A DNA stretch of 64,000 bases from Mobula hypostoma (taxonomy: Eukaryota). A program made the translations under genes and the position numbers. This document shows, piece after piece, positions 25,040 through 64,000 of this stretch. Numbering within the stretch: position 1 is the first letter of the stretch; every line of letters starts with the position of its first letter. The notes beneath the pieces are model-generated. The model saw only the letters and a list, made by a program, of their open reading frames with translations, was not told the origin of the DNA and made no database searches. The DNA is taken from assembly GCF_963921235.1 (NCBI RefSeq), contig NC_086125.1:6386001-6450000 (forward strand), read 5' to 3'.

Positions 25040-25069
25040 TCATTCAAAAGACATCAAGTTTGTGGGAAG
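25040..25069 (-). pseudogene. RALGPS-like terminal coding exon (LPTNLMSFE*)
   Basis: Poly-T tract plus TGCAG acceptor, then CTT CCC ACA AAC TTG ATG TCT TTT GAA TGA; RALGPS1/2 end in P.NLM.FE*. Confidence 0.92.
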
Positions 25070-31042: not shown

Positions 31043-31357
31043 ACTCATATACCCTTCCGTGAACTTGCATCCTTCTCTTTGGTGAATACAGATGAGAAGG
31101 ACTCATTCTGGACCTCATCCACATCACCCAGCTCCACACATAGATTAACCCTTTGATTCCCAATGGGACCCACTCTTTCCCTGCCTACTCTCTTGTTCTT
31201 GATATAAAAAATCTTGAGATTCTTCTTAACCTGTTATTCTTAACCAAGGAGAATTCATGTGCTTTTTCATTTTGTCCTCTTAACCTGCAAAGCTTGATAT
31301 TTATCTTTGGCGGGGGACTAGAGGAAACCTGATAGACTTGGATTGGGATGTACTTGC

Positions 31358-31447
31358 CTGTCTCCAGTTGGTCTTGCAAGTTCTGCTCAGATGCTTGAAC
31401 CACAGCGTAGCATTCATTCTGCTGCCTGCCAGAAACTTGTAGGAATT
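31358..31447 (-). pseudogene. RALGPS-like PH exon (NSYKFLAGSRMNATLWFKHLSRTCKTNWRQ), acceptor lost, GC donor
   Basis: Strong match to NSYKFQAGNRMNAMLWFKHLS; no AG|GN at the expected position (CTTCCT-AAT); donor CAG|GCAAGT. Confidence 0.92.
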
Positions 31448-31569
31448 AGGAAGCTCAAGGCAGCGTTGAACCACAATTACACAGCACAACACAAAGAAGA
31501 GCAGCAATAATTTGCAAAACAGATAATTGCACTGGTGATAAAAACTAAAAGAGCTCTATTGTGCCCTAT

Positions 31570-32098
31570 GCTCCTGACTCTACATTGGTGAAGCTCGTCA
31601 TAAATTGGGGGAGAACTTCGTCAAGCACCTCAAAAGGGATCCACCAAAAGGGAAGTTCCTGGTGGCCAAACATTTTAACTCCAGTTCCCATTCTTGGTCC
31701 AACACGTTGGTCTACGGCCACCTCTTGTGTCAAGATGAAGCTATCCTCAGGGTTGTAGAACAACACCTTATATTCCATCTGGGAACCCTCCAACCTGATG
31801 GTACGAATTTCCCTCCCCCTCCCTTCTTCATCTATTCCCCACTCTGGTCTCTTACCTCTCCTCACCTGCCTTATCACCTCTCCCCCTCCTTCGCTTTCTC
31901 TATGATCCACTCAGCTTTCTTCCTCCCCAGCCCTTTAACCATTCTGGCTTCACATCACCTTTCAGCCATTCCCCTTCCCCCCCACCCTTTTCATTCTGGT
32001 GCCGTTCCCCTTCTTTCTCAGTCCTGAGGAAGGGTCTCAGCCCGAAACAGCGACATTCATTTCCTTAGATGCTGCCCAACCTGCTGAGTTCCTCCAGT

Positions 32099-32102
<4 letters not shown>
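31570..32102 (+). mobile_element. Older Penelope-like fragment
   Basis: VAKHFNS...EQHLIFHLGTLQPDG; variant hammerhead near 32020-32055. Confidence 0.8.

Positions 32103-32184
<82 letters not shown>
32103..32184. repeat. (TG)n microsatellite
   Basis: Seen directly, one interruption. Confidence 0.97.
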
Positions 32185-32186
<2 letters not shown>

Positions 32187-32689
32187 GCTAAACGAACTTT
32201 AATACTGCTTTGTGCAGCCGAATTTGCAGATGATACAAGATAGGCAGAGGGGCAGGCAGTGTTGAGGAAGCAGGGAGTCTGCAGAAGGACTTGGATAGAT
32301 TGGGAGAATAGGCAAAGAGGAGGCAGATAATATAGATTAGGGAAGTGTATGGCCATGCATTTTGGTAGAAATTTACAAGTTCAAAGTAAATTTATTATCA
32401 AAGTACTTATATGTCACCATACACGACCCTGAGATTCAGTGTATTGCAGGCATACTTAATACATTTATAGAGTGATCGCCAAAACAGAATCAATGAAAGA
32501 CCGCACCAACTTGAGCATTTAACCAGTGTGCAAAAGACAACAAACTGCAAATACAAAAAAAAACTAATAATGAACAAATAAGCAATGAATATTGAGAACA
32601 CGAGATGACAAGCTCTTGACAGTGAGTCTATAGGTTGTGGGAACGTTTCAACGATGGGACAAGTGAAGTTGAGTGACGTCATCCCCTTT

Positions 32690-33360
32690 GGCTGAGGGGT
32701 AATAACTGTTCCTGAACCTGCTGGTGATAATCCTGAGGCTCCTGCACCTTCTACCTGGTGGCAGCAACGAGAAGAGAGCGTGTCCTGGATGGTGGGGGTT
32801 CCTGATGATGGACGCTGCTTTCCTGTGACAATGTTTCATGCAGATGTGCTCAATGATGGAGAGGACTTTACCCATAATGGACTGGGCCATATCCACGACT
32901 TTTAGTATGATTTTCCCATGGTGTTTCCATACAGGGCTGTGATGCAACCAATGTACTCTCTATTACACTTCTGTAGAAGTTTGTCTTGCTGACTTTGAGT
33001 AAGAGGTTGTTGTTATGGAACCCTTCAGTCAGATTTTCAACCTCCCTCCTGTATGCCGATTCACCACCACCTTTGATTTGGTGTATGACGATGGTGTCGT
33101 CAGCAAACTTGAATATGGCATTGGAGCTGTGCTTGGCCACACAGTCATAAGTACAAGGCAAGTAGAGCAGAGGGCCAAGTACAGAGCTCTGTGGGGCACC
33201 TCTTCTGGTGGAGATTGTGGAGGAAATATTGTTTTGCCAATCTGAAATGAATCAGGTCCACAAGCGAGGAAATCAAGGATCCAATTGCACAAGCAGGTAC
33301 TGAAGTCAAGGTCTTGGAGCTTGTTGATTACTTTTGAGGGATGATAGTACTGAAGTGTTC
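32690..33360 (-). mobile_element. Rex1/Babar-type LINE fragment
   Basis: LCNWILDFL, KFADDT and HPGHALFSLLPPGRR motifs. Confidence 0.82.
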
Positions 33361-34435
33361 TTAAAGTTGTTACAGCTGGGAGCGATAATGGGGACAAGCT
33401 CCCAATGCCCATTAAATGGCGTGTGCCTCAAATAGCCTCCGACGACCAAGTCCAGCTCCTGCCCTTCAGGTGTGGCTTAGCTACCAAGAATGGTGGAACC
33501 GTTTCTGCTGACAGGAGGAGAGGCAAAGGCTGGTTACTGGTGCCTTAAAACCAGTTGCTTCAGGAGGCGGATGGGGCTCGGTCAGGCGCGGTTGGCGGCT
33601 CATCGAGGAGAAGGAAAAATCCGATCTCAAATTTCCGCCACCTTGCAGCTATACCCACTCATGGGGAAGGCTTTGGGAGTCAACCCCGAGGAAATAATCC
33701 AGAGCTGGAGTCCCTAAGTCTCTCCGGAAGGCTGCTTGCATGGCGGCCTCAGAGACTGAAATCACAGGATCCTCAGGGGGCTGTGGGAGTTTGCGATGGC
33801 TCCTCCACGTTTTTACGGTCAAAGCCAGCATAAAGGCATTGGGTTCATCACGAAGTGAAGTCCTGCTGTCACCTACGTTGTCTGAAGGGATGGTGGATAA
33901 TATCATGGTATCCATTCATTATCTTTTTTTTTGGGGGGGGTGAGATGAATGTGTGGGGAAGAGTATTTATTTCCCCTCTGGCCTTCACAGTTGCAGAGAA
34001 AATGTTAAATAAAGTATGATAATCAAAACACTAAAAAAAACACTAGGTCTAGTTTTAGACGGGTTACTGCATTGTATCTCTCTATGAGCAAGGAAGGACA
34101 TAGATTTAAGTTAAGGAGTAAAAGACTTAGAGGGTGGATCAGGCGTGAAATGCACCACTTACTTAAATGTAAAAATATACATACTCACTGTAATCCAGTG
34201 TTTTATTGTTATGTATTGCAATGCACTGCTGCCACAAAGTTAACAAATTTCACGACATACGCCGGTGACATTAAATCTGATTCCGAATCCTACTAAGGGT
34301 TCTATGCCGGACTTGAAGCAAGAAGAGAAGGGTCGGATTGAATGGATGAAATACCCAGCACTGAGAACTACTCTTCGTACTGATAAAGAAGCAGGATCCA
34401 GGTTTAAACAGGAAACAAAGGTAGCTATGACTCAC

Positions 34436-34541
34436 CGTGTTCGGGGTCCGTGAGCTGGAACACGTCCTCGCTCTCTGGATCTTCAATCAGGAGAGGTATC
34501 CAACCCACAATCGACAACCTCTTGCAGTAACTCGACTTAAA
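34436..34541 (-). pseudogene. RALGPS-like PH exon (FKSSYCKRLSIVGWIPLLIEDPESEDVFQLTDPEH)
   Basis: ACAG acceptor, GTGAGT donor, 106 nt; FKS...S..GW....DPE..D.F.LTD motif. Confidence 0.92.
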
Positions 34542-35924
34542 CTGTCCCACAACACCAGTAGATAAATTCAATAATTAAAAATAGTTTAAGGTGCCTTCAC
34601 TTTGGACTGAATTAAATAAAATCTTTCTGGTGCTTCAAACTCCAACCTCTGCTCTTTTCCCACCCACCACCCACATACAGTATATATTTTTGAGTGACTG
34701 TATGCTTATTTGCTGTACTCTACGTGTCCTGTGCTGTGTATGACTGATGGCAGTGGGTTTTGCCCTGGAAAAACGGTGTTTCGTTTGGCTCCATTTGTAC
34801 AGGATGGTTGAATGACAATTAAACTTCAACTTGAACACCCAGATACACCAAAAGGGAGATGAACCCAATGTATTTGGGAAAGGGAAAACACAAGGGAAAA
34901 GCAGGATCAGAGAAGTGCAGGAATTGAGGGATCTCGGGAAGCTTGACAGTGTATGGTTAGGAGGCAGTTCAAGTTATTTGACTTCATTTGCCAAGAGCAA
35001 GGACCTGCTTGTGATGACAGCAAGGATACTCATTACAGCTCCTGACACCACACCGTTGGAAGGATGAAGTACCATTGGTGCAGAGATTTATGAGTGAGCT
35101 GTCAGGGTTAGAAAGGTCAAGAGACCAGCTAAATTGGGGCTGTTTATTTTGGAACAGAGGACATGGGAGATATGATTGTGGCATTTAAAATTATGAGAAG
35201 CCAATGTAATTAAGGGACATAAGTTTAAGGCCATCGGACAATGAATTAATGGGGAGGTAATAAAAACTATTTTTCCCCCACTCAAGGGTGGTGGAGGCCT
35301 GAACAAGGTAGAAGCAGAAACATCTAACCCTTTGAAAAGTGATCATGAAAACTCAAACCTATAAACCACTTAATGAACTGTAATCTAAAACACAAAGGAC
35401 AAAGGGCTGGGAAGTAGAATTATTCTGAATAGGTCTCTGTCAATTTGCAGGGATACAATAGACTGAATAGCCTCCTGTGGTACGTGTGCTGGAAGCAGTT
35501 CAGACCCTCGCTGACCCTTCAACAGCGCCTCCCTAGCTAGAAACCTTCACTCAAAGGACATGGCCAAAAGAATGTGATCATTTCTGGTTGTCCCTTCCCG
35601 AAATGGATTCATCCCGACACGCGGGACAGAAGCAAGGTCGCATTGTGTATTCCACGGACCAGCAAATCCCAGCCGGCTTAGCTAACAGAGCGGCGGACAC
35701 CCCTGCTGAAATCCAGAGGAAAACACACAGAGGATGCAGAGGGGGATCACAAAGCCGAGGAAAGAGGACTGGGTCGACACAACAGAGACCTTTGGAGAAG
35801 AGGAATTCGGTGGGTAATACCATTCCGGCTGACCGGAAGTGCACCGAGTGTGGTAAGCGTAAAGGAGTTGCGTGCTTACTGATCTGGTTAACAACGGATC
35901 GTGCAATCTGGGGTATATTATAAA

Positions 35925-36446
35925 GAATGTGTGTATTCACATCCCATTCCCATTCTGATTTGTATATCCACGGCCTCCTCTACTGTAAAGATGAAGCCAC
36001 ACTCAGGTTGAAGGAACAACACCTTATATTCCGTCTGGGTAGCCTCCAACCTGATGGCTTGAACATTGACTTCTCTAACTTCCGCTAGGCCCCACCTCCC
36101 CCTCATACCCCATCCGTTATTTATTTATATACACACATTCTTTCTCTCTCTCTCCTTTTTCTCCCTCTGTCCCTCTGACTATACTCCTTGCCCATCCTCT
36201 GAGTTTTCCCCTCCCCCTTTTCTTTCTCCCTAGGCCTCCTGTCCCATGATCCTCTCATATCCCTTTTGCCAATCACCTGTCCAGCTCTTGGCTCCATCCC
36301 TCCCCCTCCTGTCTTCTCCTATCATTTCGGATCTCCCCCTCCCACTCCCACTTTCAAATCCCTTACTCACTCTTCCTTCAGTTAGTCCTGACGAAGGGTC
36401 TCGGCCCGAAACGTCGACTGTACCTCTTCCTAGAGATGCTGCCTGG
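35925..36446 (+). mobile_element. Young Penelope-like 3' fragment with intact hammerhead
   Basis: GLLYCKDEATLRLKEQHLIFRLGSLQPDGLNIDFSNF, pyrimidine-rich UTR, hammerhead at 36384-36419. Confidence 0.9.
36384..36419 (+). ncRNA. Minimal type-I hammerhead ribozyme motif (Penelope-like element)
   Basis: AGTC-CTGACGA-A-GGGT(CTCG)GCCC-GAAA-CGTC-GACT: stem I AGTC/GACT, conserved cores CUGANGA and GAAA, stem II hairpin, palindromic ACGT stem III, GUC cleavage triplet. Confidence 0.8.
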
Positions 36447-37398
36447 TCTCATTGTCACACTGATAGTTTTTTTGAATTTCCTCTGTACAAGTTACTGTTG
36501 GCTCTCCCACATTACTACAGGAACAATGATATAGAAAACTTTCATTGGCTGAAGATTACTTTAAGATATCATAAAATGTTTAGAGAAATGCAATTATTTT
36601 CCTTCTCATCCTTATCACAAAGTTAGCAGGCGATGAGGTACAAAGCCTCAAATGCTGGCTGTTCATCTCAGACCAAAGCCCAACATGGAAAATATTCCAC
36701 CCACAGCACAAACTAACTTTAAAGAACGTAAATTTGCAGAATTATGTTCTTTAAACCTAAACCTGAAATTGAAAGGGTCAAAATAGCTTCAAACCGAAAC
36801 ATTAACTCTTCCCAGATACCACCTGACCTGCTGCGCGCTTCCAACATTTTGTTAGTATTTTAGATTCAAATTAAATGGTTCAGTTTAATACCAGAGAATG
36901 TATACAGTACACAGCCTGAAATTCTTCCTCTTCTCAGACATCCACAAAAGAAGAAACCCCAAAGAATGAATGATAGACACATGGTTGAATGAGAGATTTT
37001 CAGTGTCTGTGGCTTTTTTAAAAAGTGAGTTTCATTTTGTATGGGGAGGGGTCACTCTTGCTCTCTGGTCTAAAATCAAATGCTGCTGCAAACAGTCAGC
37101 AGGTTGGGCAGCACCTGTGGAAAGAGAAACACTTAACCATTTCAGGTCCAGGATCATTCAACAGAACAAAGAGAGAAAAACAAGTTAGTTTTTTTAGTAT
37201 CAGAGAAGTGAGGAAGGGCTGAGTAGAACAAAGGGAATGTATCCCGGAGGGGAAGCCCATTTGTGCAAGCACATTATGTCTTTGCGTCTATAATGTGGTT
37301 AATAGTATCAAGTCATTCAGTACCCAACTCTCTCTGATAACTGGCCAACAGAAATAAAAGACTGTCAACGAGAGGCAGTGTGAGGACCGATTCCCTAC

Positions 37399-37486
37399 CA
37401 GAGGTTTCTTGCCATTCTTCAGGATAGTTTTCCTCTGCAGAAGACTTTCAATGGTTGCACATCCTTGAACATCAGGCAATACGAGT
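37399..37486 (-). pseudogene. RALGPS-like exon, start of PH domain (LVLPDVQGCATIESLLQRKTILKNGKKPL)
   Basis: CTCTTAG acceptor, GTAGGG donor; matches TIQGVLRRKTLLKEGKKP. An upstream acceptor (exon extending to 37506) would be out of frame. Confidence 0.88.
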
Positions 37487-39262
37487 CTAAGAGGAGAAGA
37501 GCAGAGCTAGAAACATTACTCTCGACTCAATGACATAACCTCTGTTATCCAACACCCTGCAGCTGACATCCCAAATTCCACTCATCTGCCATCAATGCTA
37601 TGCCCGCAAACCGATATTGGCTCTTGCCTGAGTAATGTCTTGATATTAAAACAACTTCCACATTTTCACAATTACTTATTTTTATTTCCATGACTGATTT
37701 TATTTCCATAACATAGGAGAATGCTCATCTCATTGAGTCTGGCTGGCACACAGAATAGTACAATCTCATTCCATATAACCTATTCTCCCAGCAATCCCGT
37801 CTACTTGCCCTAGGTTCCTACATATATACTAGGGATAATCTACAAAGGCCAATTCACCTCCCAGTCCACACATCTCTGGGACACGGGATGAAACTGGAGC
37901 ACCCAGGGGAAACCAACACAGTCATAGAGAGGAACTGAAAGTTCCACACACAGATAACACCGGTTAAGATTGAACTGCACCATCAGCACTGTGAGATAGC
38001 AACTTTACTGAATGTGCCTTGGTGGCATACTCAAAACATTAGCTGCTAGCAGTGTTTAGAAATCCTCAGCTTCTCAGAGTACCCATGATGCCAACAGAAA
38101 CTGATGGCAGCATGGGTACATGTCCACATTTGGTAGGTTAAGTGGGACTCTTATTCCAAAAAGTTGGGCATCACTACGCTATGATTTTGACCTTTACTAT
38201 CACTAAATACTCCTCTAGCAACTCTGCATTCTGTAACTCTATCCTCATGCTCAAATTTAATCGCTCTACCATTGGCTTCAATCCAGAAGCAGATGGAAGT
38301 GTGTGGAGATTTGGTTACAAGGAAAATGAATGAGGCAATGGGGTGGTTCTGTGTGCTGTTCTGAAGAAATCCTTGCCAGCTTTGACCCACACCCAGCACT
38401 TGACCTGTAGGTTATGACACAAATATTCGCGCAAATTTGGGAGGCGGGATGGAGATACATCTCTACCAAAGGAGGTCCGCTGGCCTGCAGGTCACCCTTG
38501 GGTAAGATGTAGCACCTACTTAAATCCCCTGATCAGGGTCACATGTAGCCATGGGAGCAAGTGGTAGATGGTCATATGAGCAGATGGTGCACATCACGGA
38601 TCCTGGTTATGTGATCAGAGACGCCAGGCAGACGGTCTCTGAAGAGCATTAATTAATAATGGCTTGGGTCACCCATCTTGCAAAGGCACAGCCCAGAAGG
38701 CAATGGCAAACCACTTCTGTAGAAAAATTTGCCAAGAACAATCATGGTTATGAGACCATGAATGAAACGTCATACGACACAGCACATGTCAAACAAAGAG
38801 TAAATATAGAATTCAGGTTTGGCATTCATTTATTTTATTGAGAAACAGGCCCTTCTGGAACTTTGAGCTGTGCTGCCCAGCAAGTACCCCACTTAACCCT
38901 AGCCTAATCATGCGACAATTTACAATGACCAATTAACCTACTAACCAGTACGTTTTTGGACTGTGGGAGGAAACCAGAGCACCTGGAGGAAACCCACACA
39001 GTCATACAAACTCCTTACAGGTGGGTGCTCGGTGCCATCGGAGCTGAATGCCAAAGGCTATGTAAACCAAGAGCACCAACGAAACCTCATTGCCCTCTCA
39101 CTGAAATTTTCCTTTCCAGACCTTGGAACACAAAAGCAAAACATCTGCATTCTACCCAGATACCTGAATAGTCCAAATACAGGCTCTCTCTAACATTACC
39201 ACTGACTAAAATCAAGGGCGTTGACCATCAGTGTACCAGTCCTCTCACTGAGGATTACATAC

Positions 39263-39331
39263 CCGACTACATCCCTGCTGCAGCTCTGCGTTTTCCGTGC
39301 CATGGTACCCAGAGAATGATACAGTCGAGTC
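39263..39331 (-). pseudogene. RALGPS-like exon (TRLYHSLGTMARKTQSCSRDVV)
   Basis: CACAG acceptor, GTATGT donor, 69 nt, phase 2 to 2; RLYHSLG motif. Confidence 0.88.
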
Positions 39332-39653
39332 CTGTGCCAGAAACAAATCCCTGTCAACATACACTCAAGGGATGTGGTGGTGGGCGAGAGAGACAAACGA
39401 CTATACACCTCTTGGCCTGCTCCACCACCATGAACACAGTCAATCTCTATTTTATCTACCACATTGGCACTACATCTCCTAAAACTTCTAGTTATCACAC
39501 ACCAATGGCCTTGGGTTTTAAAATATCAAGTTCAAGTTTATTGCCATTCACGCATATACAAGTATACTGCCTCTGGACCATGATGCACAATACAGTACAT
39601 ATAATTCACCCATCACAAAGTAATATTATCACAAATGAAATGGCAAATAATAA

Positions 39654-39852
39654 CAACAGGAATTCTGCAGATGCTGGAAATTCAAGCAACATACATCAAA
39701 GTTGCTGGTGAACGCAGCAGGCCAGGCAGCATCTATAGGAAGAAGCGCAGTCGACGTTTCAGGCCGAGACCCTTCGTCCTGAAACGTCGACTGCGCTTCT
39801 TCCTATAGATGCTGCCTGGCCTGCTGCGTTCACCAGCAACTTTGATGTATGT
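39654..39852. mobile_element. Fold-back Penelope-like mini-insertion
   Basis: Long near-perfect inverted arms with a centrally deleted hammerhead pair; 13-bp TSD TGGCAAATAATAA (39641-39653, 39853-39865). Confidence 0.88.
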
Positions 39853-40763
39853 TGGCAAATAATAAAATGCATTTCAGAAAACTGAGATTTGCAATAAGGC
39901 GCATTTACAAGTTTAAGAAGTAAACAGCAAGACCCTACCGGGCTTCAGAAGTGTTGAGAGCTGGGTGGTAGCAGGGCGTTTAGTCTTGCGGCCTTGGGGT
40001 GGGGGGAGGCTAGGGAAAGAAGAATTCGGATATTTATTCATTGAGATACAGTATGGAATAGGCCTTTCAAGCCCAGGAATCCCACAATTTAACCCTAATC
40101 ATTGGACAATTTATAAGGACCAATTAACCTACTAACTGGTACATCTTTGGACTGCGTGAAGAAACCGGACCGCCCAGAGGAAACCTATGTGCTCACAGGG
40201 AAAACATACAAACTCCTTACAGGCAGCAGCGGGTATTGAACCGCAAAGTGCTGTGCTGACCACTTTTAGAACCGATACGAGTTCAATTCCCACCACTGCC
40301 TGTAAGGAGTTTGTACGTTTTCCCTGTGACTCTGTGGGTTTCCTCTAGTTACTCAGGTTCAGAGTTTTAGTGTACAAGAAATGACTGGCCTTTCTGCTTT
40401 CTATGCACAAGATCAAGTCATCACCACCCTATATCATCGGCCTTCCACCCTTCATGTGAAACGTTTCCCAACTTCTTTTCTGAATGGATTTACTTCAGTT
40501 TTATAATTATACCCCATCCCACCAGCAGAGTTGTGCTTTTTGTCTGCCTAGGAACAATATTAAAAGACAAAGACCTCAAACCACTCTTAAATTCCACGGG
40601 CCATGGAACATGGAACCTCTTCATAATACGTGGTCTAAATATTGATCCTGATCCACTTGGGACACTGAATCTGAGCACATCACAAGGCCTTACGCTTAAC
40701 ACCGGAACATCCCGTCTACACAATGTGACAAACCCAACCTCATCCAATTGTGCAGTCTCTCAC

Positions 40764-40821
40764 CTTTCAAAAGTTGGCCGTGTGCTCTGCTCACTATCAT
40801 CACTACTTTCTTCTTGGGTAG
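40764..40821 (-). pseudogene. RALGPS-like exon (TQEESSDDSEQSTRPTFE)
   Basis: TTCTTACAG acceptor, GTGAGA donor, 58 nt, phase 1 to 2; acidic/Ser-rich, ends P.FE(R) like RALGPS SWPAFER. Confidence 0.75.
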
Positions 40822-41508
40822 CTGTAAGAAATGAGAGTTTCTCACAAAATAGAAGTCCTGCAGTAGGAGTTTGACCCAAAATGCTGTCTATTTCCTCACA
40901 TCCCCCCCCCCCCACACCAACTAGAGATGCTACTTCACCCTCTGAATTCCTCCTGAAGATTATCTGTTATTCCAGATGCTGGCATCTGCAGTCTCCTGAC
41001 TCCATGTCTGTCTGCATTTCTCCCCAGGCATTCACCAGTTCTGCAGGCAACTGGGGGACAAGTGTGCTGGAGATCTGGGAGTAAGGGGACCGTGCCCAAG
41101 GATGGCAGAGTGGTGCAGCTGGAAGTGCTGACGCCTCTACACCAATGATCTGGGTCCAATCCCGTGTGAAATTTCCACACGCAAGGTGGGATGGAGGTGC
41201 CTATGACATCAGAGACGAGGAGGAATTTCTTTAGCCAAAGGATGATAGGTCTGTGGGATTCATTGCCACATGACTGTGGAGGCCAAGTCAGCAGGTATAT
41301 TTAAAGCAAAGGTTGCCAGGTTATTGATTATTCAGGGTGTCAAAGGATACAGGGAGAAGGCAGGAGAACGGGGTCGGGGGGGGTGGGGATAATAAATCAG
41401 CCATGCATGAATGGAAGAACAGACTCAATGGGCCAAAAACTCTATGTCCCCATGTCTTATGGACATAGTTCTCTAGTGTCCCAAGATATGAAATGTGACC
41501 CTGGGGCC

Positions 41509-41647
41509 ATTCCATTTGATACTCACGGCAAACCACAGAATTTAACACCTGAAACCACACCCAGAAAGGTGGTAAAGCTATTCCATTTGATACTCACTGC
41601 AAACCACAAAATTTAACACAAGAAACTACACCCAGAAAGGTGGTAAG
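41509..41647. repeat. 71-bp imperfect tandem duplication
   Basis: ATTCCATTTGATACTCAC...CACCCAGAAAGGTGGTAA present twice. Confidence 0.85.
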
Positions 41648-42199
41648 GTGCTTCCACTGGGTCACAAAACTATCCCATGGCAGTGGACTTCCTGTGAATT
41701 TCACACTTGGTGATGGGGGTGGGGGAAAACAAGAGCTACAAGGCTGGAAAGGAGTACTCAAGTCTTGTGGGATTGCTGTGGATTGTTATGTTGAAATACG
41801 TAACCTGTCTTCAGAAATTCACAAGCAGCATTAAACCAAAAATGGTGTTCTTTTGAAGTGATGAAGAAACCATAGTCAATGAAAGATTATCTGTTTTAGC
41901 TTTGAAAGGTAAATGTTAATGTCAGGCCACCAAGATAAACATCCTTGCTCTTTGAAATACTGCTATGAGATCTTTCTGCATCAGCCTGTGAACGTAGACA
42001 GGATCTTGATTTGATGTTGCATTCAAGAGATGTCAGCTGATAGGAAATATCTAATCTATCAGTGCCAGATACAAGCTCATAGGTGAAGTTCCTCCAGAGG
42101 CTTAAATGCACTTCAATGTTGTACTGAGGGACTGCTGCATTGTTAAGAGTGTTGTATTTCAAATGGGATATTAATGAGGTACTGACCCTTGCAAGTAGA

Positions 42200-42975
42200 A
42201 CACATGCCACACCTGACCCTACACCTCCTCCCCCCACTACCATTCAGGGCCCCAAACAGTCCTTCCAGGTGACGTGATACTTCACCTGAGAGTCTGTCGG
42301 GGTCACCTACTGTACCCTGTGCACCGGTGAGACCTGACGTAGATTGGGAGACTGCTTCGCCAAGCACCCACCAGAAAAAGCGGGATCTCCCAGTGGCCAC
42401 CCATTTCAATTCTACTTCCCATTCCCATTATGACATGTCAGTCCATGGTCTCCTCTAATTCGTGATGAGGCCACATGCAGGTTGGAGAAACAACACCTTG
42501 TATACCATCTGACGGCATGAACATCGATTTATCAAACTTCCAGTAATTACCCCCTCCTCCTCTCCTTCAACATTCCCATTCCTGTTTCCCTCTCTCTCCT
42601 TATCTCCTTACCTGTCCATCATCTCCCTCTGGTAGTCCTCTCCCTTCCCTTTCTTCCATGGGTCTTCTGCTCTCATCTACCAGATTCCTCCTTCTCCAGT
42701 CCTTTATTTTGTTTGCAAATCAACTTCCCAGCTCTTTACTTCACCCCTCACCTCTCCTGGTTTCACCCATCACCTACCACCTTCTATTTCTTCCTCCTGT
42801 CCCTCCACCTTCTTACTCTGACCTTGCCTCTTTATTTCCGCAGTCCTGATGAAGGGTCTCGGCCCAAAATGTCAGTTGTTGACTCTTTTCTATAGACGCT
42901 GCCTGGCCTGCTGTGTTTGTCCAGAATTTTGAGTGTGTTACCTTGATTTCCAGCATCTGCAGATGCTCTCCTGCT
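42200..42975 (+). mobile_element. Penelope-like fragment (GIY-YIG region)
   Basis: IQGPKQSFQV..., GET.RRLGD.FA.H, VATHFNS remnants; degenerate hammerhead near 42842. Confidence 0.82.
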
Positions 42976-43689
42976 TGAGATCTGACTCCAAGCGGATGCA
43001 AAAGATCCCATGACACTTTCCTAAACAATTGTACGAGTTGGAGTTGCATAACATAGAAACAGGTCCTTCAGCCCATTACCTCTATGCCAACCATCACACC
43101 TAGCCATAGTAGTTCCACTTGCCTACATAAATCCCACATCCCTGCTCGTTCACCTACTTATTAAGATGCAGGGAAAGCTTCTGGATGTTACGATGCACCT
43201 TAAATGTTATTACTTTTCCTGCCTCCCCTACCTCCGCTGGTACCTCATTCCAGATACCATCCACTGTTTAAAAATTTACCCTTCTGATCTCCTTTAAGCC
43301 TCCTCCCTCTCACCTCATGCAATCTAGTTTAAACACTTTTACCACGGGAAACAGACACTGGCTATCTACCGCATACTGACCAATTAATCACGACTGATGA
43401 CTTGTGCCTTTTTTTTGTTTCCCACGGGCTGCTGAACTGTTGAAAGATGCTTCCCTTGGTGTTCAACTGCAAGTCCTTCTGACAAAGATAATCAACTCTG
43501 ACAGAATGTGAGGTACGAACTTCAGTTTGTGGAGCTTCCAATAAACAATAACACTTGTGTTAAAGCAATCTTGTGAAAGTATTCAAAAATGATAAACAGA
43601 AGTGATATTAAACAAAATTTAATATATTTTTATATGAGAAATAAGGACATATAGGAATATACTTGATCTATAGAGCAACCTCGGACCAT

Positions 43690-44280
43690 AAGGTGTAGGA
43701 GCAGAATTAGGCCATTTGGCCCATCGAGTCTGCTCCACCATTTCATCATGTTTCCCTCCAGCCCCAATCTCCCGTCTTCTCCCCGTGTTCCTTCATGCCC
43801 GGACCAATCAAGAACCTATCAACCTCTGCTTTAAATATACCCAGTGACTTGGCCTCCACCGCTGCCTGTGGCAATGAGTTCCCCAGATTCACCATTCTCT
43901 GGCTAAAGAAATTCCTTATCTCCATTCTAAATGGATGTCCTTCTATTCTAAGGTTTTGTCATCTGGTCTTAGGTTTCCCCCACCAAAGGGAACATCCTCT
44001 CCACATCCACTCAATTGAGGCCTTTCAATATTCAATAGGTTTCAATGAGATCCCCCTCCCCCCAGATCATCTGAATTCCAGTGAGTACAGACCCAGAGCC
44101 ATCCAATGCTCCTCTTCTGACAAGCCTTTTAATCATGAAATCATTTTCGTGAACTTCCTTTGAGCCCTCTCCAACGGCAACACATCCTTTCTTTGTTAAG
44201 GGACCTAAAACTGCTCACAATACTCCAAGTCAGGCCTCAGCAGTGCCTTATAAAGTCTCAACATTACATTCTTCCTTTTA
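43690..44280 (-). mobile_element. CR1 LINE 3' fragment
   Basis: Reverse complement of CR1 C-terminal region and tail. Confidence 0.85.
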
Positions 44281-44479
44281 TACATTAGTTAAAAGTGTGC
44301 AATTTTTAATCACTAATAAGAAAGCATGTTTCTACTCGTTACTACAAGGAACTTGCTATGCACAAATTGGTTGTTAGCTCTCCTATTCCAGTGACTACCC
44401 TTCAGGGAGCATTTCATTGGTCAAAACCGTGAAAGGTTTATAGATGGAAATATGAAACTGAAGATCTGTAGCAAAGGTT

Positions 44480-45012
44480 GGGCCACACCCGGAGTGTTGC
44501 ATACAGTTCTGATCACCCCACGATAGGGAGAACGCCGAGGCTTTGGAGAGGGCGCAGAAGAGGTTTACCAGGATGCTGCATGGTTTAGAGGGCTTACGGT
44601 ATCACGAGAGGCTGGACAAATGGGTTGTTTCTCTGGAGTGGTGGAGACCGAGGGGAGATCTGATAGAGGTTTACAAGATTATAAGAGGCTCAGATAGAGT
44701 AGACAGAGAGTATTTTTTGAGCTGGGTAGAAATGTCTAGTACCAGAGGGCATGCATTGAAGATGAGAGGGGGTAGGTTCAAGGGGGATATGAGGGGCAAG
44801 GGAGTGGTGGATGCCTGGTATGCACTGTCTGGTATGGTCGTAGAGACGTACATTTGAGGCTTTTAAGGGATATTTAAACAGGCACATGGATACGAGGAAG
44901 GTGGAGGGATATGGACATTGTGTAGGTAGGAGCGATTAGTTTTCAGATTTACTTTCAGCTGGTTCACCACAACACTGTGGGCCCAAGGGCCTGTTCCTGT
45001 TCTATGTTCTAT
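44480..45012 (+). mobile_element. CR1 LINE 3' fragment
   Basis: LERAQKRFTRML...RGDLIEVYKI; TTCTATG tail ends 37 bp from a RALGPS-like exon donor. Confidence 0.88.
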
Positions 45013-45048
45013 GAAATCATTCAAGCAGACAGTGCTCCCATACAGTAC

Positions 45049-45209
45049 CTGGCCATGACTCATCTGGAGAGTGGTCACAGGCCGGCTGGTGTTCGGCCTG
45101 CATCGCCCACGGCAAACTACCTTCGATCACACTATCATCCAAGAGGCTCTGCGGTCGACTGCCGAGGAACGTGGCCCCCTCGGGATCCGTGGTGCTCGCC
45201 CGTCTACTG
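45049..45209 (-). pseudogene. RALGPS-like exon (SRRASTTDPEGATFLGSRPQSLLDDSVIEG...SWP)
   Basis: GTACAG acceptor, GTACTG donor, 161 nt, phase 2 to 1; ATF....P..LLDDSV.E motif. Confidence 0.85.
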
Positions 45210-46187
45210 CTGTACAAAGTAGGAAGGATACACTGAGGACACTTAATCTGCAGCCACCTATAAAACAGGACTAGAAGAGTCAGCGACGCAAAGATAGGAA
45301 CACAGCTCGACCTTCACGTTCTGCTCAGCGTTCGCCAGCTCCCTCCACGACTAATATCTGAGGTACAAAGCAACTGCAGGAAATTAAACAGATTGAATAA
45401 AATTAAAGACTCATGGCAGAACTGTCCAGTCCACCAGAACGTACATGACTTTCAAAGAGAACTCCCCCACACCATCAGTGTGGGACAGGGGCACCCCGAC
45501 CCCCAGCAAGGCGCCAGCTGGAGATGGGAGACCCCAACCACAGACCCCAAGGAAGCAGCAGTGGGAAGGAGTGGAAACCCCTGCTGCCTTCAAGGACTCA
45601 GTGGTGATCGGTGGAGCCCAGGTTATCTAATTAATAACCACAGACGTGGGCTCAGGACAGAGTTCAAATCATGGTGGCTGTGCGATTATAAATCTGGATA
45701 ATGTCCTGGAATTTAAAATTGTCATTAGGAACGATGATCACACAAAACCACCCAGATGCCCAAACGTACAACTCTAATGGGTTTCAGATGTGAAAATCTG
45801 TTACTCTTACCTTGTGGGGTCTAAAAATTATTCAATTAAGTTAATGAAGTTAAATAAACTACTCACAGGAGCAGATGGCGTCCTTTCACATCATTCAAAG
45901 CTTCTCTCAATGTCGTTCTGAATCAGATGGTAGCTCAGAATGGTTCTCTTTCCCCTTGGCCAGGTTGAACTGCACTGAAGATGCAGCAGATGGTGCCCTC
46001 TGTGCCAAAGTGCCAGCTCAGGTGTGCCACTGAAGGCTGGTTTTGTCCAGACACCTGCAGTCCCATTTAGCAGCCGTTCATGGTTGACAGAATCTGAATC
46101 AGGTTTAATCACCAGCACGTGTCGTGAAATTTGATGCACAGTGACACATACTTGCCCAACGCCCTCAGAGTGAAGTCCATCACTTAC

Positions 46188-46293
46188 TGGTAATCAGCGC
46201 TCTGCCACTTCCTGTGACCACGCAGCAGGCACAGACACGAGGCTGTGGCATCGCCATCAGAATATTCAACTGCTTCAGTGGAGGACAGTGGAC
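46188..46293 (-). pseudogene. RALGPS-like exon (GPLSSTEAVEYSDGDATASCLCLLRGHRKWQSADY)
   Basis: TCTCAG acceptor, GTAAGT donor, 106 nt; GHRK..S..Y matches GHRKCHSLGY. Confidence 0.8.
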
Positions 46294-46409
46294 CTGAGAC
46301 AGAGGGGTAGCTAGAGTTTAGACAGAACTTGTCACTCTGTTCAATAGGAATAGCCTCCTCCTGCCAGAACCAATCTTACTTCCCTCCTCACTCATCCTCA
46401 TTCATAGGT

Positions 46410-46717
46410 GTCAACATAAAAGGCATCCGTTAGTCTTGCGAGACCATGGATCTGCGCCTGGAAAGTCTTCACTCTCCAGGGTGCAGGCCTGGGCAGGGTT
46501 GTATGGAAGACCAGCTGTAAGTCTCCCCTCTCCACGACACCAATGTTGTCCAAGGGAAGGGCATTAGGAACCATACAGCTTGGCACCAGTGTCGTCGCAG
46601 AGCAATGTGTGATTAAGTGCCTTGCTCAAGGGCACAACACGCTGCCTCGGCTGGGGCTCAAACTAACGACCTTCAGTTCGCTAGTCCAATGCCTTAACCA
46701 CTTGGCCACATGCCCAT
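46410..46717 (-). mobile_element. tRNA-derived SINE
   Basis: Reverse-complement copy of 53475-53775. Confidence 0.8.
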
Positions 46718-47335
46718 GGGTGTCAACAGCTCCTTAGGAAATAAAGAATTTTAATGCAGTGCCATTCTACCATGGTGCAAATCACTCCCCACAATAAAAT
46801 CATTTTCAGTGGCTGAGTGGATGGCATCCCTTTCACCCCCTAAGGCTGTGGATTCAATTTTCCATTCCAGAAATACCAGTACAAAAGTGTGAGCTAATAC
46901 TCCAGCATGTCACCAGGAGTACGGCATCTTTCAGGTGTGATGTTTAATCAAGGCCAATCACAAAGACCTCCAACATCATACCAAAGTGAAGCAAAAGCTT
47001 TCCCTGGTATCTTACCCAACCTTTATCCATGTTCAACGTTACTAGATGATCTGGTGAAAACCATCTTGCTTATGCAAGCTATAATACAATAGCGGGGTAC
47101 ACTTCAAAAGTACTTTGTTAGCGGGAAGGTGCTTTAGGGCTTTTGAACGTCATGAAAAAATACACTGATAACAGTTCCTCGGAAAGCACAAGGCTCAAGG
47201 ATAGCTTTCTGGTTATAAAACTATTGAACTGTCCACTAGTACGATAAGGCTCTTGACCTCACAATCTACTTCCTTATGGCCATTCACCTGATTGCCTGCT
47301 TGCACTACAGTTTTGCACAAAGTTGGAGCCCTCAC

Positions 47336-47386
47336 CTTCAGCTTCGATGTGGAGGACATGACACAGGTTCAAGCAATAGAGAGAGT
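47336..47386 (-). pseudogene. RALGPS-like exon ([15 protein letters not shown]), premature stop and phase shift
   Basis: TTCCACAG acceptor, GTGAGG donor; LSL..EP motif; in-frame TGA at 47340-47338; ends in phase 2 while the next exon starts in phase 1. Confidence 0.8.
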
Positions 47387-47581
47387 CTGTGGAACGCTGT
47401 CAAATCATATGTGAGCCTCGTGGAATAACTCTGGAATTCCGCAAATCTCAAGTGAATCAATGTTTCGGAATGCAGCCAGTGTTTATTTTTGCAGGAAAAG
47501 GCGCAACCTCCTCCTGTCGAATTCAACAGTAAAAGTAAAAACAAAAATAACCTTGGAGAACCAAACTGGAGACGATGGCAG

Positions 47582-47672
47582 CTGTAGTTGTCTTGCTCCA
47601 AGAAGGATTGTAGCTCCTCAATGTATCGTGCAGAGTCCAGATACATCTGGACATGAGGCAATGATGGAAGAT
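47582..47672 (-). pseudogene. RALGPS-like exon ([30 protein letters not shown]), donor lost
   Basis: TTTATAG acceptor; matches LPHVQKYL.SV.YIEELQKFVEDDNY; expected GT donor reads CT (TAC AG|CTGCC). Confidence 0.9.
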
Positions 47673-48254
47673 CTATAAACAATGCAAGTTAGAATAGTAA
47701 CACATAGTTCAGACATCACATGTGGAGATAGAGGAAAAGAATTAATGTGAAATGTCATCAACCCAGCCGGAGAAGTCCCAGGCCAGATACTCAGATTGTC
47801 AGTGTTGCCAAGTTCTTTGGATCACTGAATGCCCTTTCCAATGCCTGCATGGTCTTCTTCAGTTCCTCAAAAGACCCAAAGCACTTTGTGCCTTCTGGAT
47901 GCTTCTATAGTTTCAGCAGGTATGGCCTTGGGATGCCCAAAAGCTGATATTGTTTCATGATTTCTCCCCAGAGAGGCCTTGTAATCAGTCTTGAAGGATC
48001 TTCTCTGTGCTCCCTGAACTGGCTGACGTGACAAAGCGTAGAGTGGAGTACCTCTTTTGGGGGATTTAGCGTCAGGCACGCAGACAGTGCCGAGCCTTGG
48101 TGCTGAGGATTCTGGCCTGAGGGAAGATACTGATATTGGCTCATTTATCCTACTAATGGATTTGTATAGAACTCTAACATTACAGGACTTCAAATGCAGT
48201 ATTCCTTGTCCTTTATTATTCAGTCTTGTAAAGGAGCTTCTTCTACTCCTGCCA

Positions 48255-48921
48255 AAGATGGCTGAGAGGCAGCAAGTGTGGTCTTGGTCTGGAGAAAGAC
48301 AAAGAAGGATGAACAGCGTGCGCGGCCATTCCGAATGATATTGTACGTGGTAACTAGGGAGTCGTGCACAATCCTGATTTGATGGAGACAGTCGTGAGAA
48401 GCACGGAGGAACACCTGGAGAAACGTCTGAAATGCCCGCTTCGTTGCCGCTGCTACTATGCGATTGAGAATCTCCGGAGGGGAAGGCCCCAAATCCTTGG
48501 CTTTGCCTATTGCCGGGGCCGGGGTTGAAGCGCTTGACAGAGATGGTGCTCGGTGTCGGAGAGCTGGTCAGAGGCTCGGAGTTTTTGGACGGACTCAGAG
48601 TCAGACTGTGGTCGGATGCTTCCAGGATGCTGCATCGGCAAGTTTGCGGTGCTGGAGGTTCACTGTCTGCGTGAGATGATGGGACTTTTGAGAGACTTTG
48701 AGACTTTTTACCGTGCCCATGGTCTGCTCTTTATCAAATTACAGTATTGCTTTGCACTGTTGTAACTATATGTCATAATTATGTGGTTTTAGTCAGCTTT
48801 TAAGTCGGTTTGTCATGTGTTTCTGTGATATCATTCTGGAAAAACATTGTATCATTTCTTAATGCATGCATTACTAAATGACAATAAAAGAGGACTGTGT
48901 GTCCTCATAATCTAAAAAAAA
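48255..48921 (+). mobile_element. Non-autonomous LINE-related repeat with poly-A end
   Basis: AAGATGGC start, same body and tail as 30135-31042. Confidence 0.75.
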
Positions 48922-49104
48922 CTTGAATATAGTATTCTGGTTACGATTCAGAAGTAGATCTCTGCACGACAAGCTCCAAGATATTCAGTAGAATGAAATG
49001 ATTTGTTGCTTTGCTGAATAGTTAAGATCAGGCGTAGTACAGCAGGCCACAGGTCCTTGATGTCAGCCATGGAATCAGAGCATGCAAACAGATCATTCTG
49101 CCAG

Positions 49105-50301
49105 GCATATAGATGAGGGTAGTGCAGTGGATGTGATCTATATGGATTTTAGTAAGGCATTTGACGAGGTTCCACACGGTAGGCTTATTCAGAAAGTTAG
49201 AAGGCATGGGATCCAGGGAAGTTTGGCCAGGTGGATTCAGAATTGGCTTGCCTGCAGAAGGCAGAGGGTGGTGGTGGAGGGAGTACATTCAGATTGGAGG
49301 ATTGTGACTAGTGGTGTCCCACAAGGATCTGTTCTGGGACCTCTACTTTTTGTGATTTTTATTAACGACCTGGATGTGGGGGTAGAAGGGTGGGTTGGCA
49401 AGTTTGAAGATGACACAAAGGTTGGTGGTGTTGTAGATAGTGTAGAGGATTGTCAAAGATTGCAGAGAGACATTGATAGGATGCAGAAGTGGGCTGAGAA
49501 GTGGCAGATGGAGTTCAACCCGGAGAAGTGTGAGGTGGTACACTTTGGAAGGACAAACTCCAAGGCAGAGTACAAAGCAAATGGCAGGGTACTTGGTAGT
49601 GTGGAGGAGCAGAGGGATCTCGGGGTACATGTCCACAGATCCCTGAAAGTTGCCTCACAGGTGGATAGGGTAGTTAAGAAAGCTTATGGGGTGTTAGCTT
49701 TCATAAGTCGAGGGATAGAGTTTAAGAGTTGCAATGTAATGATGCAGCTCTATAAAACTCTGGTTAGGCCACACTTGGAGTATTGCGTCCAGTTCTGGTC
49801 ACCTCACTATAGGAAGGATGTGGAAGCATTGGAAAGGGTACAGAGGAGATTTACCAGGATGCTGTCTGGTTTAGAAAGTATGCATTATGATCAGAGATTA
49901 AGGGAGCTAGGGCTTTACTCTTTGGAGAGAAGGAAGATGAGAGGAGACATGATAGAGATGTACAAGATAATAAGAGGAATAGATAGAGTGGATAGCCAGC
50001 GCCTCTTCCCCAGGGCACCACTGCTCAATACAAGAGGACATGGCTTTAAGGTAAGGGGTGGGAAGTTCAAGGGGGATATTAGAGGAAGGTTTTTTACTCA
50101 GAGAGTGGTTGGTGCGTGGAATGCACTGCCTGAGTCAGTGGTGGAGGCAGATACACTAGTGAAGTTTAAGAGACTACTAGACAGATATATGGAGGAATTT
50201 AAGGTGGGGGGGTTATATGGGAGGCAGGGTTTGAGGGTCGGCACAACATTGTGGGCCGAAGGGCCTGTACTGTGCTGTACTATTCTATGTTCTATGTTCT
50301 A
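49105..50301 (+). mobile_element. Young 5'-truncated CR1 LINE with long open RT frame
   Basis: ORF 49082-50302 (406 aa): YMDFSKAFD, GVPQGSVLGPLLF, KFEDDTK, LVRPHLEYCVQFWSP; (TTCTATG)n tail. Confidence 0.96.
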
Positions 50302-50619
50302 GCTTGTGCGTGCCAGAGCCCTCCGAGACCAACGCTCTAATTTGTGTTTTCTTCAGTAGGACAGCTTCCACTAACGCCTTCCGTTTCCAACACGAATCAA
50401 TATGGAAAATTCTCAGATCGCCAATCAGAAACAAATTCCTTCAAGCTTGGAACTTTGTGACCATACATGACATTAATCCCCTCAAAGTGTCTTGTCAGAT
50501 TAAATGTACAACCTGCCAAATCCATTGTACTGTTGAGCACTTGGAATTTATTTTATATAACCACTTTAACATAACTTTTAATTCCCTGGCTCTGACCACC
50601 TCATTTTCACCATGGATGT

Positions 50620-52671: not shown

Positions 52672-52790
52672 CTCATCACTGTAGACTTCTGAGCAATCAC
52701 TGACATTCGAGGAAATGTTTCTGTATAACCTTTGAACATTTTCCAATGCAATCTTTAAACATTGAGAGTGCTTGTAGGAGAAAATAAAAT
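52672..52790 (-). pseudogene. Candidate degenerate RALGPS exon (GEF domain; ...ALENVQRLYRNISSNVSD...)
   Basis: CCTTTCAG acceptor; LENVQR..NI....SD resembles LENEQR...NNILRIISD and lies in the expected order. Similarity is weak, and the CR1 motif ALERVQR is an alternative source. Confidence 0.4.
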
Positions 52791-53243
52791 CTGAAAGGTT
52801 TATCCCAATGATAGCAATCAGGAAATACAATTTTAGATATCATTCTGGCTGCTGGCCAGTGTCATCTGTCCTCTCATTGGCCCTGCTTTAGATCTCTTCC
52901 TCCCATCACCAGTAGAAAAATCCAAACCATCTGCTCAGCCACAAAGCAATCCTGAAGGGGCTGGTGATGAACTTCAATGTTTCCAGCAGAGAACATGGAA
53001 GAAGACAGATACCTTCACAGCAAATAGACCTTTATAGCAGGGTAATCCCTAGTATTTCCCAGCCCATCAGCAATGCCTATAAATTCCTTGCATTCGATTC
53101 CATGTTGACTAGTCACAGAGTGAATGAAAAATTCATACGCCACCCTTCCACAAAGTATTTTGACATGTAATTACTGCTCAAATGCAGAAAAGCCCTGAAC
53201 TTTCTGACAAATTCCTAAAAGCCGCAGCATTATAGGACAAAAC

Positions 53244-63875: not shown

Positions 63876-64000
63876 TCCGTTGAGCCCTCTGGAGACATTG
63901 TGGGCTTATCAATGAAATGTCAAAGAAGGAGGGTGCCCACCTGATGACCCTGATGACATACCTACCCTCCCTCTTTGTCACCACTCCAAACCCACTGCCA

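What the first reader, a model, noticed from the sequence alone, without database searches (positions are those of the whole stretch)
31352..47672. The RALGPS-like gene appears to be a pseudogene caught mid-decay
Several independent lesions occur while exon sequences stay well recognisable and most splice sites remain canonical: donor GT absent at 47581, in-frame TGA and phase mismatch in 47336-47386, acceptor lost at about 31448, one PH exon not found, GEF exon degenerate. This pattern suggests recent lineage-specific loss of an ancient gene, independent of the mammalian loss (inference).
Basis: partly seen in the sequence, partly recalled or inferred. Interest (0 to 1): 0.75.

Follow-up and report, generated by a model that had tools for sequence, protein, structure and literature searches.

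The report
Decaying RALGPS-like gene, still transcribed
The 3' half of a RALGPS-type Ral exchange-factor gene next to PPAN has several real reading-frame and splice-site defects and lacks a core PH-domain exon although it is still transcribed, so it is most likely an ordinary pseudogene in early decay.

Summary
I mapped the minus-strand gene against the 19-exon structure of a fish RALGPS2 gene. The window holds homologues of exons 9-12, 14, 15 and 17-19. Four of them match the fish exons in length to the base, and 241 in-frame codons outside exon 10 carry no stop.

- The exon 9 donor reads CT (47581-47580).
- Exon 10 has an in-frame TGA (47340-47338) and a +1 phase error.
- The PH exon 16 homologue is absent from the window.
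- The exon 18 acceptor position reads TC (31451-31450). The nearest AG, 4 nt upstream, gives a frameshift and an immediate TAA.

The "degenerate GEF exon" near 52.7 kb is no better than chance. I add an undetected exon 13 and a corrected exon 11 (46293-46188).

Contigs from two likely RNA runs of the same species, and DNA contigs, match the window exactly across the exon 9 donor and the TGA. These two lesions are therefore not assembly errors. The RNA also shows spliced ends at exons 11 and 12, so the locus is transcribed.

Most lesions have an in-frame bypass, but every bypass leaves a PH domain without strands β2-β4. Verdict: transcribed decaying pseudogene, confidence about 0.8. The timing of the loss, whether it is lineage-specific, and "third paralogue" status were not tested.

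The scan noted this same locus once before as a probable third RALGPS paralogue (s1-142108).

The parts
47582..47672 (-). Exon 9 homologue (end of the RasGEF region, DLPSLPHVQ...QDNY). It is 91 nt, the same length as in Denticeps RALGPS2, with an AG acceptor.
   Evidence: tblastn 70% identity to turtle RALGPS2, E 7.6e-9; family HMM 31 bits; exon table
47580..47581 (-). Lost donor of exon 9: CT where GT is required.
   Evidence: Sequence. DNA contig X1 and contig X5 are identical to the window here, and the X5 contig runs through the site unspliced.
47550..47551 (-). Alternative GT donor (AAG|GTTATT) 30 nt downstream, in the same phase. A weaker GT (GTCTCC) lies at 47573-47572, 8 nt downstream.
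   Evidence: Sequence and phase arithmetic. Use of either donor is not shown.
47336..47386 (-). Exon 10 homologue (LSLLLEP...), 51 nt, with an in-frame TGA at 47340-47338 and a +1 phase error relative to exon 11.
   Evidence: Contig X10 (47143-47407) and DNA contig X1 are identical to the window.
46188..46293 (-). Exon 11 homologue (…LLRGHRKWQSADY), 106 nt, with a strong acceptor and a GTAAGT donor. The GHRK motif is kept and there is no PxxP motif.
   Evidence: An X5 contig ends its match at 46294 with 27 foreign letters beyond it, at a ...ctgtctcag| acceptor. Phases fit Denticeps exon 11.
45049..45209 (-). Exon 12 homologue (…SLLDDSVIE…), 161 nt, spliced on both sides in RNA contigs.
   Evidence: HMM hit. 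X5 and X10 contigs match only 45045-45209 and 45045-45138 and carry foreign sequence beyond. Sequence.
39263..39331 (-). Exon 14 homologue (TRLYHSLG…), a 69-nt cassette that needs a 2-nt overhang before it.
37399..37486 (-). Exon 15 homologue (PH strand β1, …LLQRKTILKNGKKPL), 88 nt, ending in phase 0.
34542..37398 (-). Interval where the exon 16 homologue (PH β2-β4, 93 nt in RALGPS2) should lie. None was found. It contains a Penelope-like repeat at 35935-36449.
   Evidence: Motif scan, tblastn, family and exon 16 HMMs, repeat map
34436..34541 (-). Exon 17 homologue (FKSS…SIVGW…FQLTDPEH), 106 nt as in RALGPS2, with donor G|GTGAGT in phase 1.
31358..31449 (-). Exon 18 homologue (NSYKFLAGSRMNATLWFKHL…), 92 nt as in RALGPS2. 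The acceptor position 31451-31450 reads TC. An AG at 31455-31454 gives +4 nt and a TAA. An in-frame cryptic AG lies at 31427-31426. The donor is GC (31357-31356).
25040..25069 (-). Exon 19 homologue (LPTNLMSFE plus stop), 30 nt as in RALGPS2, with a strong pyrimidine tract and a CAG acceptor.
52680..52805 (-). The frame is open and a phase-1 GT sits at the expected place, but TG stands where the acceptor AG should be and the similarity is at chance level.
   Evidence: tblastn E = 12; sequence; no Pfam hit; not among exon 8 HMM top hits

Best explanation
[quoted passage not shown] It lies on the minus strand upstream of PPAN and is a transcribed pseudogene at an early stage of decay. The ancestral exon-intron plan is still readable. 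The canonical mRNA, however, can no longer encode the protein. The exon 9 donor is gone. Exon 10 carries a +1 phase error that creates a TGA. No exon 13 links exon 12 to exon 14. The exon for PH strands β2-β4 (exon 16) is missing. The exon 18 acceptor is displaced by 4 nt, which gives an immediate TAA. Shown here: the lesions in the sequence, two of them in independent contigs, and transcription with some splicing. Inferred: loss of function, and that the loss is evolutionarily young.
For: The exon map was made against Denticeps RALGPS2. Exons 9, 17, 18 and 19 have identical lengths, and phases match except at the lesions. Lesions: CT donor; TGA and phase error; TC at the acceptor and a downstream TAA. 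Exons 13 and 16 are absent by family HMM and by exon-specific HMMs on both strands. No RasGEF exons 6-8 are recognisable in the 16 kb upstream. DNA contigs and contigs of two other samples of the species are identical to the window over the exon 9 donor and the TGA, and they run unspliced across them. At sites invariant between turtle RALGPS2 and amphioxus RALGPS in exons 15, 17 and 18, the window keeps 38 of 53. This is my own hand count, and it suggests relaxed constraint. Every in-frame bypass I could construct still lacks PH β2-β4.
Against: 241 codons outside exon 10 are open, and 14 of 17 splice sites are GT or AG, plus one consensus GC donor, so the decay is slight. The locus is transcribed, and the exon 11 acceptor and both ends of exon 12 are spliced. 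ORF-preserving paths exist: exon 9 extended by 8 nt plus exon 10 in its other frame; or exon 9 extended by 30 nt joined to exon 12, which resembles a known RALGPS2 isoform (P0012); exon 16 skipping is in frame; and a cryptic in-frame acceptor lies at 31427. The exon that follows exon 12 in the RNA begins with GTAC and was not identified. The 5' half of the gene is outside the window. The lesions at 31.4 and 34.5-37.4 kb were not checked against reads.
Confidence: 0.8

Rival explanations
1. The gene is still functional. It uses alternative or cryptic splice sites and exons that homology searches miss, and makes a protein with a divergent linker and a usable C-terminal domain.
For: In-frame bypasses exist for the exon 9/10 defects and for the exon 18 acceptor. 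The RNA is spliced at exons 11 and 12 and continues into an unidentified exon that starts with GTAC. The conserved exons hold no internal stops.
Against: No exon 16 equivalent exists anywhere in the window. A PH fold without β2-β4, and without β7 if the cryptic acceptor is used, is not expected to form; this rests on general knowledge of the PH fold. The needed donors are weak (GTCTCC, GTTATT). The RNA contigs run unspliced through the exon 9 donor.
Confidence: 0.07
2. The locus encodes a truncated, GEF-only protein that ends at the TGA in exon 10 or in the retained intron after exon 9. Only the downstream PH exons are decaying.
For: An open frame runs from exon 9 through the retained intron to the TGA (116 codons, 47688-47341). 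RNA contigs cover this stretch colinearly.
Against: No recognisable RasGEF exon lies in the 16 kb upstream, and the only candidate for exon 8 is at chance level and lacks its acceptor. Exon 11 and exon 12 are still spliced downstream of the TGA.
Confidence: 0.06
3. This is an older or partial duplicate, and an intact copy of the same paralogue exists elsewhere in the genome. It would then be a duplicated pseudogene, not the loss of a gene.
For: The 5' exons are not seen in the window.
Against: Unique parts of the stretch have single-copy-like contig depth (about 5-7) in the DNA run at 90% likeness. The conserved PPAN neighbour argues for the ancestral locus. The scan holds no other RALGPS note in this genome.
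Confidence: 0.04
4. The untested lesions (missing exon 16, exon 18 acceptor) are assembly or haplotype artefacts.
For: They were not checked against reads. A repeat lies in the exon 15-17 interval.
Against: The two lesions that were checked are real in three independent sets of contigs. The window has no N.
Confidence: 0.03

Closest known systems
RALGPS2 (and RALGPS1), Ras-independent RalGEFs with a PH domain and an SH3-binding motif
   Same: The exon-intron plan matches exon by exon, with identical lengths for exons 9, 17, 18 and 19. Identity in the conserved exons is 48-78%. The C-terminal ...PTNLMSFE end is the same. The domain description of the family comes from PMC4858283.
   Different: This gene is far more diverged than fish and tetrapod RALGPS2 are from each other (82-88% over the C-terminal half). 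The exon 11 homologue has no PxxP motif. Exons 13 and 16 are missing, two splice sites are lost and one exon is frameshifted. It lies next to PPAN rather than at the RALGPS1 or RALGPS2 locus. The human locations of those genes are from my own knowledge.
Unitary (non-processed) pseudogenes, ancient genes lost in one lineage
   Same: Introns are retained, the lesions are scattered small mutations plus an exon loss, and transcription continues.
   Different: Unitary status requires that no functional copy exists elsewhere and that orthologues are intact in relatives. Neither could be tested here.
Processed (retro)pseudogene
   Same: Both carry disabled coding sequence.
   Different: This locus keeps all introns at the ancestral positions and phases, so it is not a retrocopy.

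Membership tests
RALGPS family (RalGEF with PH domain) | CDC25/RasGEF catalytic domain | tested here: inconclusive
   Only the last RasGEF-region exon (exon 9) is recognisable. Exons 1-8 were not found in 47673-64000. The candidate at 52805-52680 is at chance level. The 5' part of the gene may lie outside the window.
RALGPS family (RalGEF with PH domain) | C-terminal PH domain | tested here: not met
   Exons for β1 (exon 15), β5-β6 (exon 17) and β7 plus the helix (exon 18) are present. The exon for β2-β4 (exon 16) is absent. The exon-sized pieces are too short to reach Pfam thresholds. The strand assignments are my own reading of the PH fold.
RALGPS family (RalGEF with PH domain) | Proline-rich SH3-binding (PxxP) motif in the linker | tested here: not met
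   The exon 11 homologue (46293-46188) keeps GHRK but has no PxxP.
RALGPS family (RalGEF with PH domain) | Family-specific exon structure and C-terminal motif | tested here: met
   Exon lengths and phases match Denticeps RALGPS2. The gene ends in LPTNLMSFE plus a stop.
Third RALGPS ohnologue ('RALGPS3') | Separate from RALGPS1 and RALGPS2 by phylogeny, and in the PPAN/ANGPTL6 paralogous region | tested here: inconclusive
   PPAN-like Brix exons lie on the same strand downstream (Pfam Brix, 3.5e-8). No RALGPS1 sequence or orthologue was obtained for a tree. No fibrinogen-type nested gene is in the window. No paper uses the name.
Unitary pseudogene | Disabling mutations in an otherwise orthologous, intron-bearing locus | tested here: met
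   Two lesions were verified in contigs.
Unitary pseudogene | No functional copy elsewhere in the genome, and intact orthologues in related lineages | not testable with these tools
   No eukaryote genome search was available. The protein searches returned only RALGPS2 and fragments.

The most novel reading that the evidence does not exclude
The locus may be a surviving third RALGPS ohnologue, lost in mammals, that this lineage is dismantling step by step. It remains transcribed and spliced, possibly into repeat-derived exons, and may still give a PH-less or truncated product. That would make it a datable natural series of domain-by-domain gene death across rays and sharks.
Probability: 0.12. 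Interest if true: 0.5.

Novelty: new member of a known kind. Interest (0 to 1): 0.3.

Why it matters
On its own this is an ordinary pseudogene. It has some value as a well-preserved example of early gene decay: exon lengths are intact, most splice sites are intact, and it is still transcribed. The gene family has only two members in humans (PMC4858283). If the third-paralogue reading holds and relatives keep an intact copy, each lesion could be dated and the order of domain loss read off. For genome annotation, the practical message is that a homology-based gene model here should be flagged as a pseudogene rather than patched into a protein.

Tried and rejected
- **Orthologue retrieval failed.** A search of 1.8 billion representatives with exon 18 gave only RALGPS2, teleost fragments and amphioxus RALGPS. 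Word-index searches with the exon 18 ORF and the exon 12 ORF found nothing. A search with turtle RALGPS2 listed only RALGPS2 proteins.
- **A mixed alignment did not work.** Aligning amphioxus RALGPS with the window exons, to bias a profile search, came out misaligned and I dropped it.
- **My first exon 11 guess was wrong.** I had placed it at 46054-45976. The RNA contig boundary at 46294 and the GHRK match moved it to 46293-46188.
- **Exon 16 is not hidden in the read-through after exon 15.** I considered that the sequence there (VGNRSSHCLSL..TVFYF) is a decayed exon 16. The exon 16 profile gives no hit there.
- **The 'GEF exon' is unsupported.** The candidate at 52.7 kb was treated as unsupported.
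- **The exon after exon 12 could not be identified.** AG|GTAC occurs on the minus strand downstream only inside repeats (43243, 36423, 26539).
- **No ANGPTL-type nested gene.** tblastx with the Denticeps nested fibrinogen gene found none in the window.
- **One contig look-up missed.** The first look-up of encoding contigs (Seriola) had no record.
- **The related species gave nothing at the lesions.** Organism B's contigs yielded no listed differences at any lesion.
Full report
**What is there.** tblastn with a turtle RALGPS2 protein (P0022, obtained through) and a profile of 71 RALGPS2 proteins find a series of minus-strand exon matches between 47.7 kb and 25.0 kb. To judge exon boundaries and phases I fetched the compact RALGPS2 gene of the fish Denticeps clupeoides (L001). 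I mapped its protein exactly onto the DNA, which gave 19 coding exons with known lengths and phases.

**Exon map against that plan:**

| Exon homologue | Window coordinates | Length | Note |
|---|---|---|---|
| 9 | 47672-47582 | 91 nt | same length as in the fish |
| 10 | 47386-47336 | 51 nt | in-frame TGA, phase error |
| 11 | 46293-46188 | 106 nt | corrected position |
| 12 | 45209-45049 | 161 nt | spliced at both ends in RNA |
| 14 | 39331-39263 | 69 nt | |
| 15 | 37486-37399 | 88 nt | |
| 17 | 34541-34436 | 106 nt | same length |
| 18 | 31449-31358 | 92 nt | same length; acceptor lost |
| 19 | 25069-25040 | 30 nt with the stop | same length |

Amino-acid identity to the fish exons runs from 32% in the linker exons to 51-78% in exons 9, 17, 18 and 19. 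Outside exon 10, 241 in-frame codons are free of stops. Random sequence would do this with probability about 1e-5, by my own arithmetic, (61/64)^241. The locus therefore coded for a protein until not long ago.

**The lesions.**
- **Exon 9 donor.** CT follows the exon at 47581-47580 instead of GT.
- **Exon 10.** In the frame delivered by exon 9, exon 10 reads LSLLLEP..., matching LSLKIEP of RALGPS2, and then hits TGA at 47340-47338. With either possible donor (47335 or 47287) its length is a multiple of three. The plan needs 3n+2, so there is a +1 phase error before exon 11.
- **Exon 13.** Exon 12 ends with a 1-nt overhang, as in RALGPS2. The 55-nt exon 13 that should restore the phase for exons 14 and 15 was not found.
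- **Exon 16.** This exon is 93 nt and encodes VASWTKYWAAL...; by my reading of the PH fold it carries strands β2-β4. It is absent. The motif scan, tblastn, the family profile and an exon 16-only profile all give only noise on both strands of the whole window.
- **Exon 18 acceptor.** Exon 17 ends G|GTGAGT in phase 1. Exon 18 must therefore start at 31449, but the two bases before it are TC. The only AG nearby (31455-31454) adds four bases and gives G|CT TCC TAA. ORF fragments from other vertebrates read ...ILGNSYKF, which shows the normal ...ttag|GN AAT acceptor at exactly this place.

The exon 18 donor is GC in a perfect CAG|GCAAGT context, a known functional variant, and I do not count it as a lesion. 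It has an open frame and a phase-1 GT at the expected spot, but TG where the acceptor should be. Its tblastn E-value is 12, it has no Pfam hit, and it has no place among the top hits of an exon 8 profile. I treat it as unsupported. No RasGEF exon upstream of exon 9 is recognisable in the 16 kb up to the window's end.

A DNA contig from the probable source sample matches the window with no differences over 46691-47750. Two small runs of the same species from other samples (X5 and X10) are labelled 'RNA?' by the tool. They hold far more of this stretch than DNA runs of that size could, in my estimate. Their contigs are identical to the window over 47389-47750 (X5) and 47143-47407 (X10). The CT donor and the TGA are therefore not assembly errors. 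The lesions at 31.4 kb and 34.5-37.4 kb were not checked.

**Transcription.** The same runs show that the locus is expressed and partly spliced.
- Contigs from X5 (382 nt) and X10 (175 nt) match only 45045-45209 and 45045-45138 and continue into sequence that does not lie next to it. The upper limit is exactly the exon 12 acceptor. The lower limit is the G|GTACTG donor plus four ambiguous letters.
- The DNA contig stays unique down to 44986, so a repeat-induced chimera does not explain this boundary.
- A 956-nt X5 contig matches 45366-46294 and carries 27 foreign letters beyond 46294. That is the ...ctgtctcag| acceptor of what turned out to be the true exon 11.
- This contig then runs unspliced through the exon 11 donor. 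Other contigs run unspliced through exon 9, its dead donor and exon 10.
- Spliced and intron-containing contigs have similar depths. That could mean poor splicing or simply nuclear pre-mRNA. I cannot tell which.
- The exon that follows exon 12 in the RNA starts with GTAC. AG|GTAC occurs downstream only inside repeats (43243, 36423, 26539). It is neither exon 14 nor exon 15.

**Can a protein still be made?** I looked for in-frame escapes.
- Exon 9 extended by 8 nt to a weak GT (GTCTCC, 47573), plus exon 10 read in its other frame, restores the phase into exon 11.
- Exon 9 extended by 30 nt (AAG|GTTATT, 47551) can join exon 12 directly. This mirrors a RALGPS2 isoform that skips exons 10 and 11 (P0012).
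- Skipping exon 16 is in frame by design.
- A cryptic AG at 31427-31426 restores the frame in exon 18 at the cost of eight codons (NSYKFLAG).

The reading frame could thus survive by chance-level routes. Every route yields a PH domain without β2-β4, and with the cryptic acceptor also without β7, which should not fold. At positions identical between turtle RALGPS2 and amphioxus RALGPS in exons 15, 17 and 18, the window keeps 38 of 53 (10/13, 15/25 and 13/15). This is my hand count. Changes such as V to P and L to Q fall in exon 17. That points to relaxed constraint or to long paralogue-specific divergence.

**Identity and context.** Fish and tetrapod RALGPS2 share 82-88% identity over the C-terminal half. 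This gene shares 50-70% in its best exons, so it is not an ordinary RALGPS2 orthologue. On the same strand downstream lie PPAN-like exons: Brix domain, E 3.5e-8, at 4280-4510, with further matches to my recollection of PPAN at 7309-7449 and 10388-10639. Denticeps RALGPS2 carries a fibrinogen-domain gene nested in intron 7. From my own knowledge, ANGPTL1 and ANGPTL2 sit inside human RALGPS2 and RALGPS1, and ANGPTL6 lies beside PPAN on 19p13. That would fit a lost third ohnologue there. I obtained no RALGPS1 sequence and no orthologue, no nested fibrinogen gene is in the window, and no paper uses the name RALGPS3. Humans are described as having two RalGPS genes among six RalGEFs (PMC4858283).

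**Verdict.** 'Recent', 'lineage-specific' and 'independent of the mammalian loss' remain inference. The related species in the read data is about 2.5% diverged (580 and 1037-nt contigs with 13 and 26 differences) and gave no listed information at the lesions. As a biological result this is an ordinary kind of object, a non-processed pseudogene that is still transcribed. Its interest lies mainly in the unusually legible state of decay and in the possible third paralogue.

Noticed in passing
window 4280-4510, 7309-7449, 10388-10639 (minus strand): PPAN-like exons downstream of the RALGPS-like gene, in the same orientation. The first gives a Pfam Brix hit (3.5e-8). The other two match PPAN only by my recollection of its sequence.
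   Followed up: partly
window 36423 and 26539 (minus strand), inside repeats 35935-36449 and 26436-26639: Penelope-like repeat copies carry ...ggaagag|GTACAGTCGACGTTTCGGGCC, an AG|GTAC junction. The copy at 36423 followed by AGA|GTGAGT would make a 53-nt exon that is in frame between exon 12 and exon 17. The RNA contigs leave exon 12 for an exon that starts with GTAC. Exonisation of the repeat is possible but untested.
   Followed up: no
window 45366-46294: A 929-nt colinear stretch in the likely RNA run X5 starts at the exon 11 acceptor and retains the intron after exon 11. Similar colinear contigs cover 47143-47750 and beyond. This could be heavy intron retention or pre-mRNA.
   Followed up: partly
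L001 8959-13988 (Denticeps RALGPS2 locus): A fibrinogen-domain gene on the opposite strand is nested in intron 7 of RALGPS2. No counterpart is present in the window (tblastx). If one exists, it would lie upstream of position 64000.
   Followed up: partly
window 47870-48730 (minus strand): A 287-codon open frame just upstream of exon 9, with related copies elsewhere in the window (30.1-30.8 kb). It looks like a transposable element. The X5 contig that covers exon 9 runs up into it.
   Followed up: no
window 32060-32200: A long (CA)n/(TG)n microsatellite in the exon 17-18 intron.
   Followed up: no
window 47257-47328 (plus strand): A weak match (PHNLLPYGH...) to the RALGPS2 PxxP/GHRK region on the wrong strand, overlapping exon 10. 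Judged to be chance (3.3 bits).
   Followed up: yes
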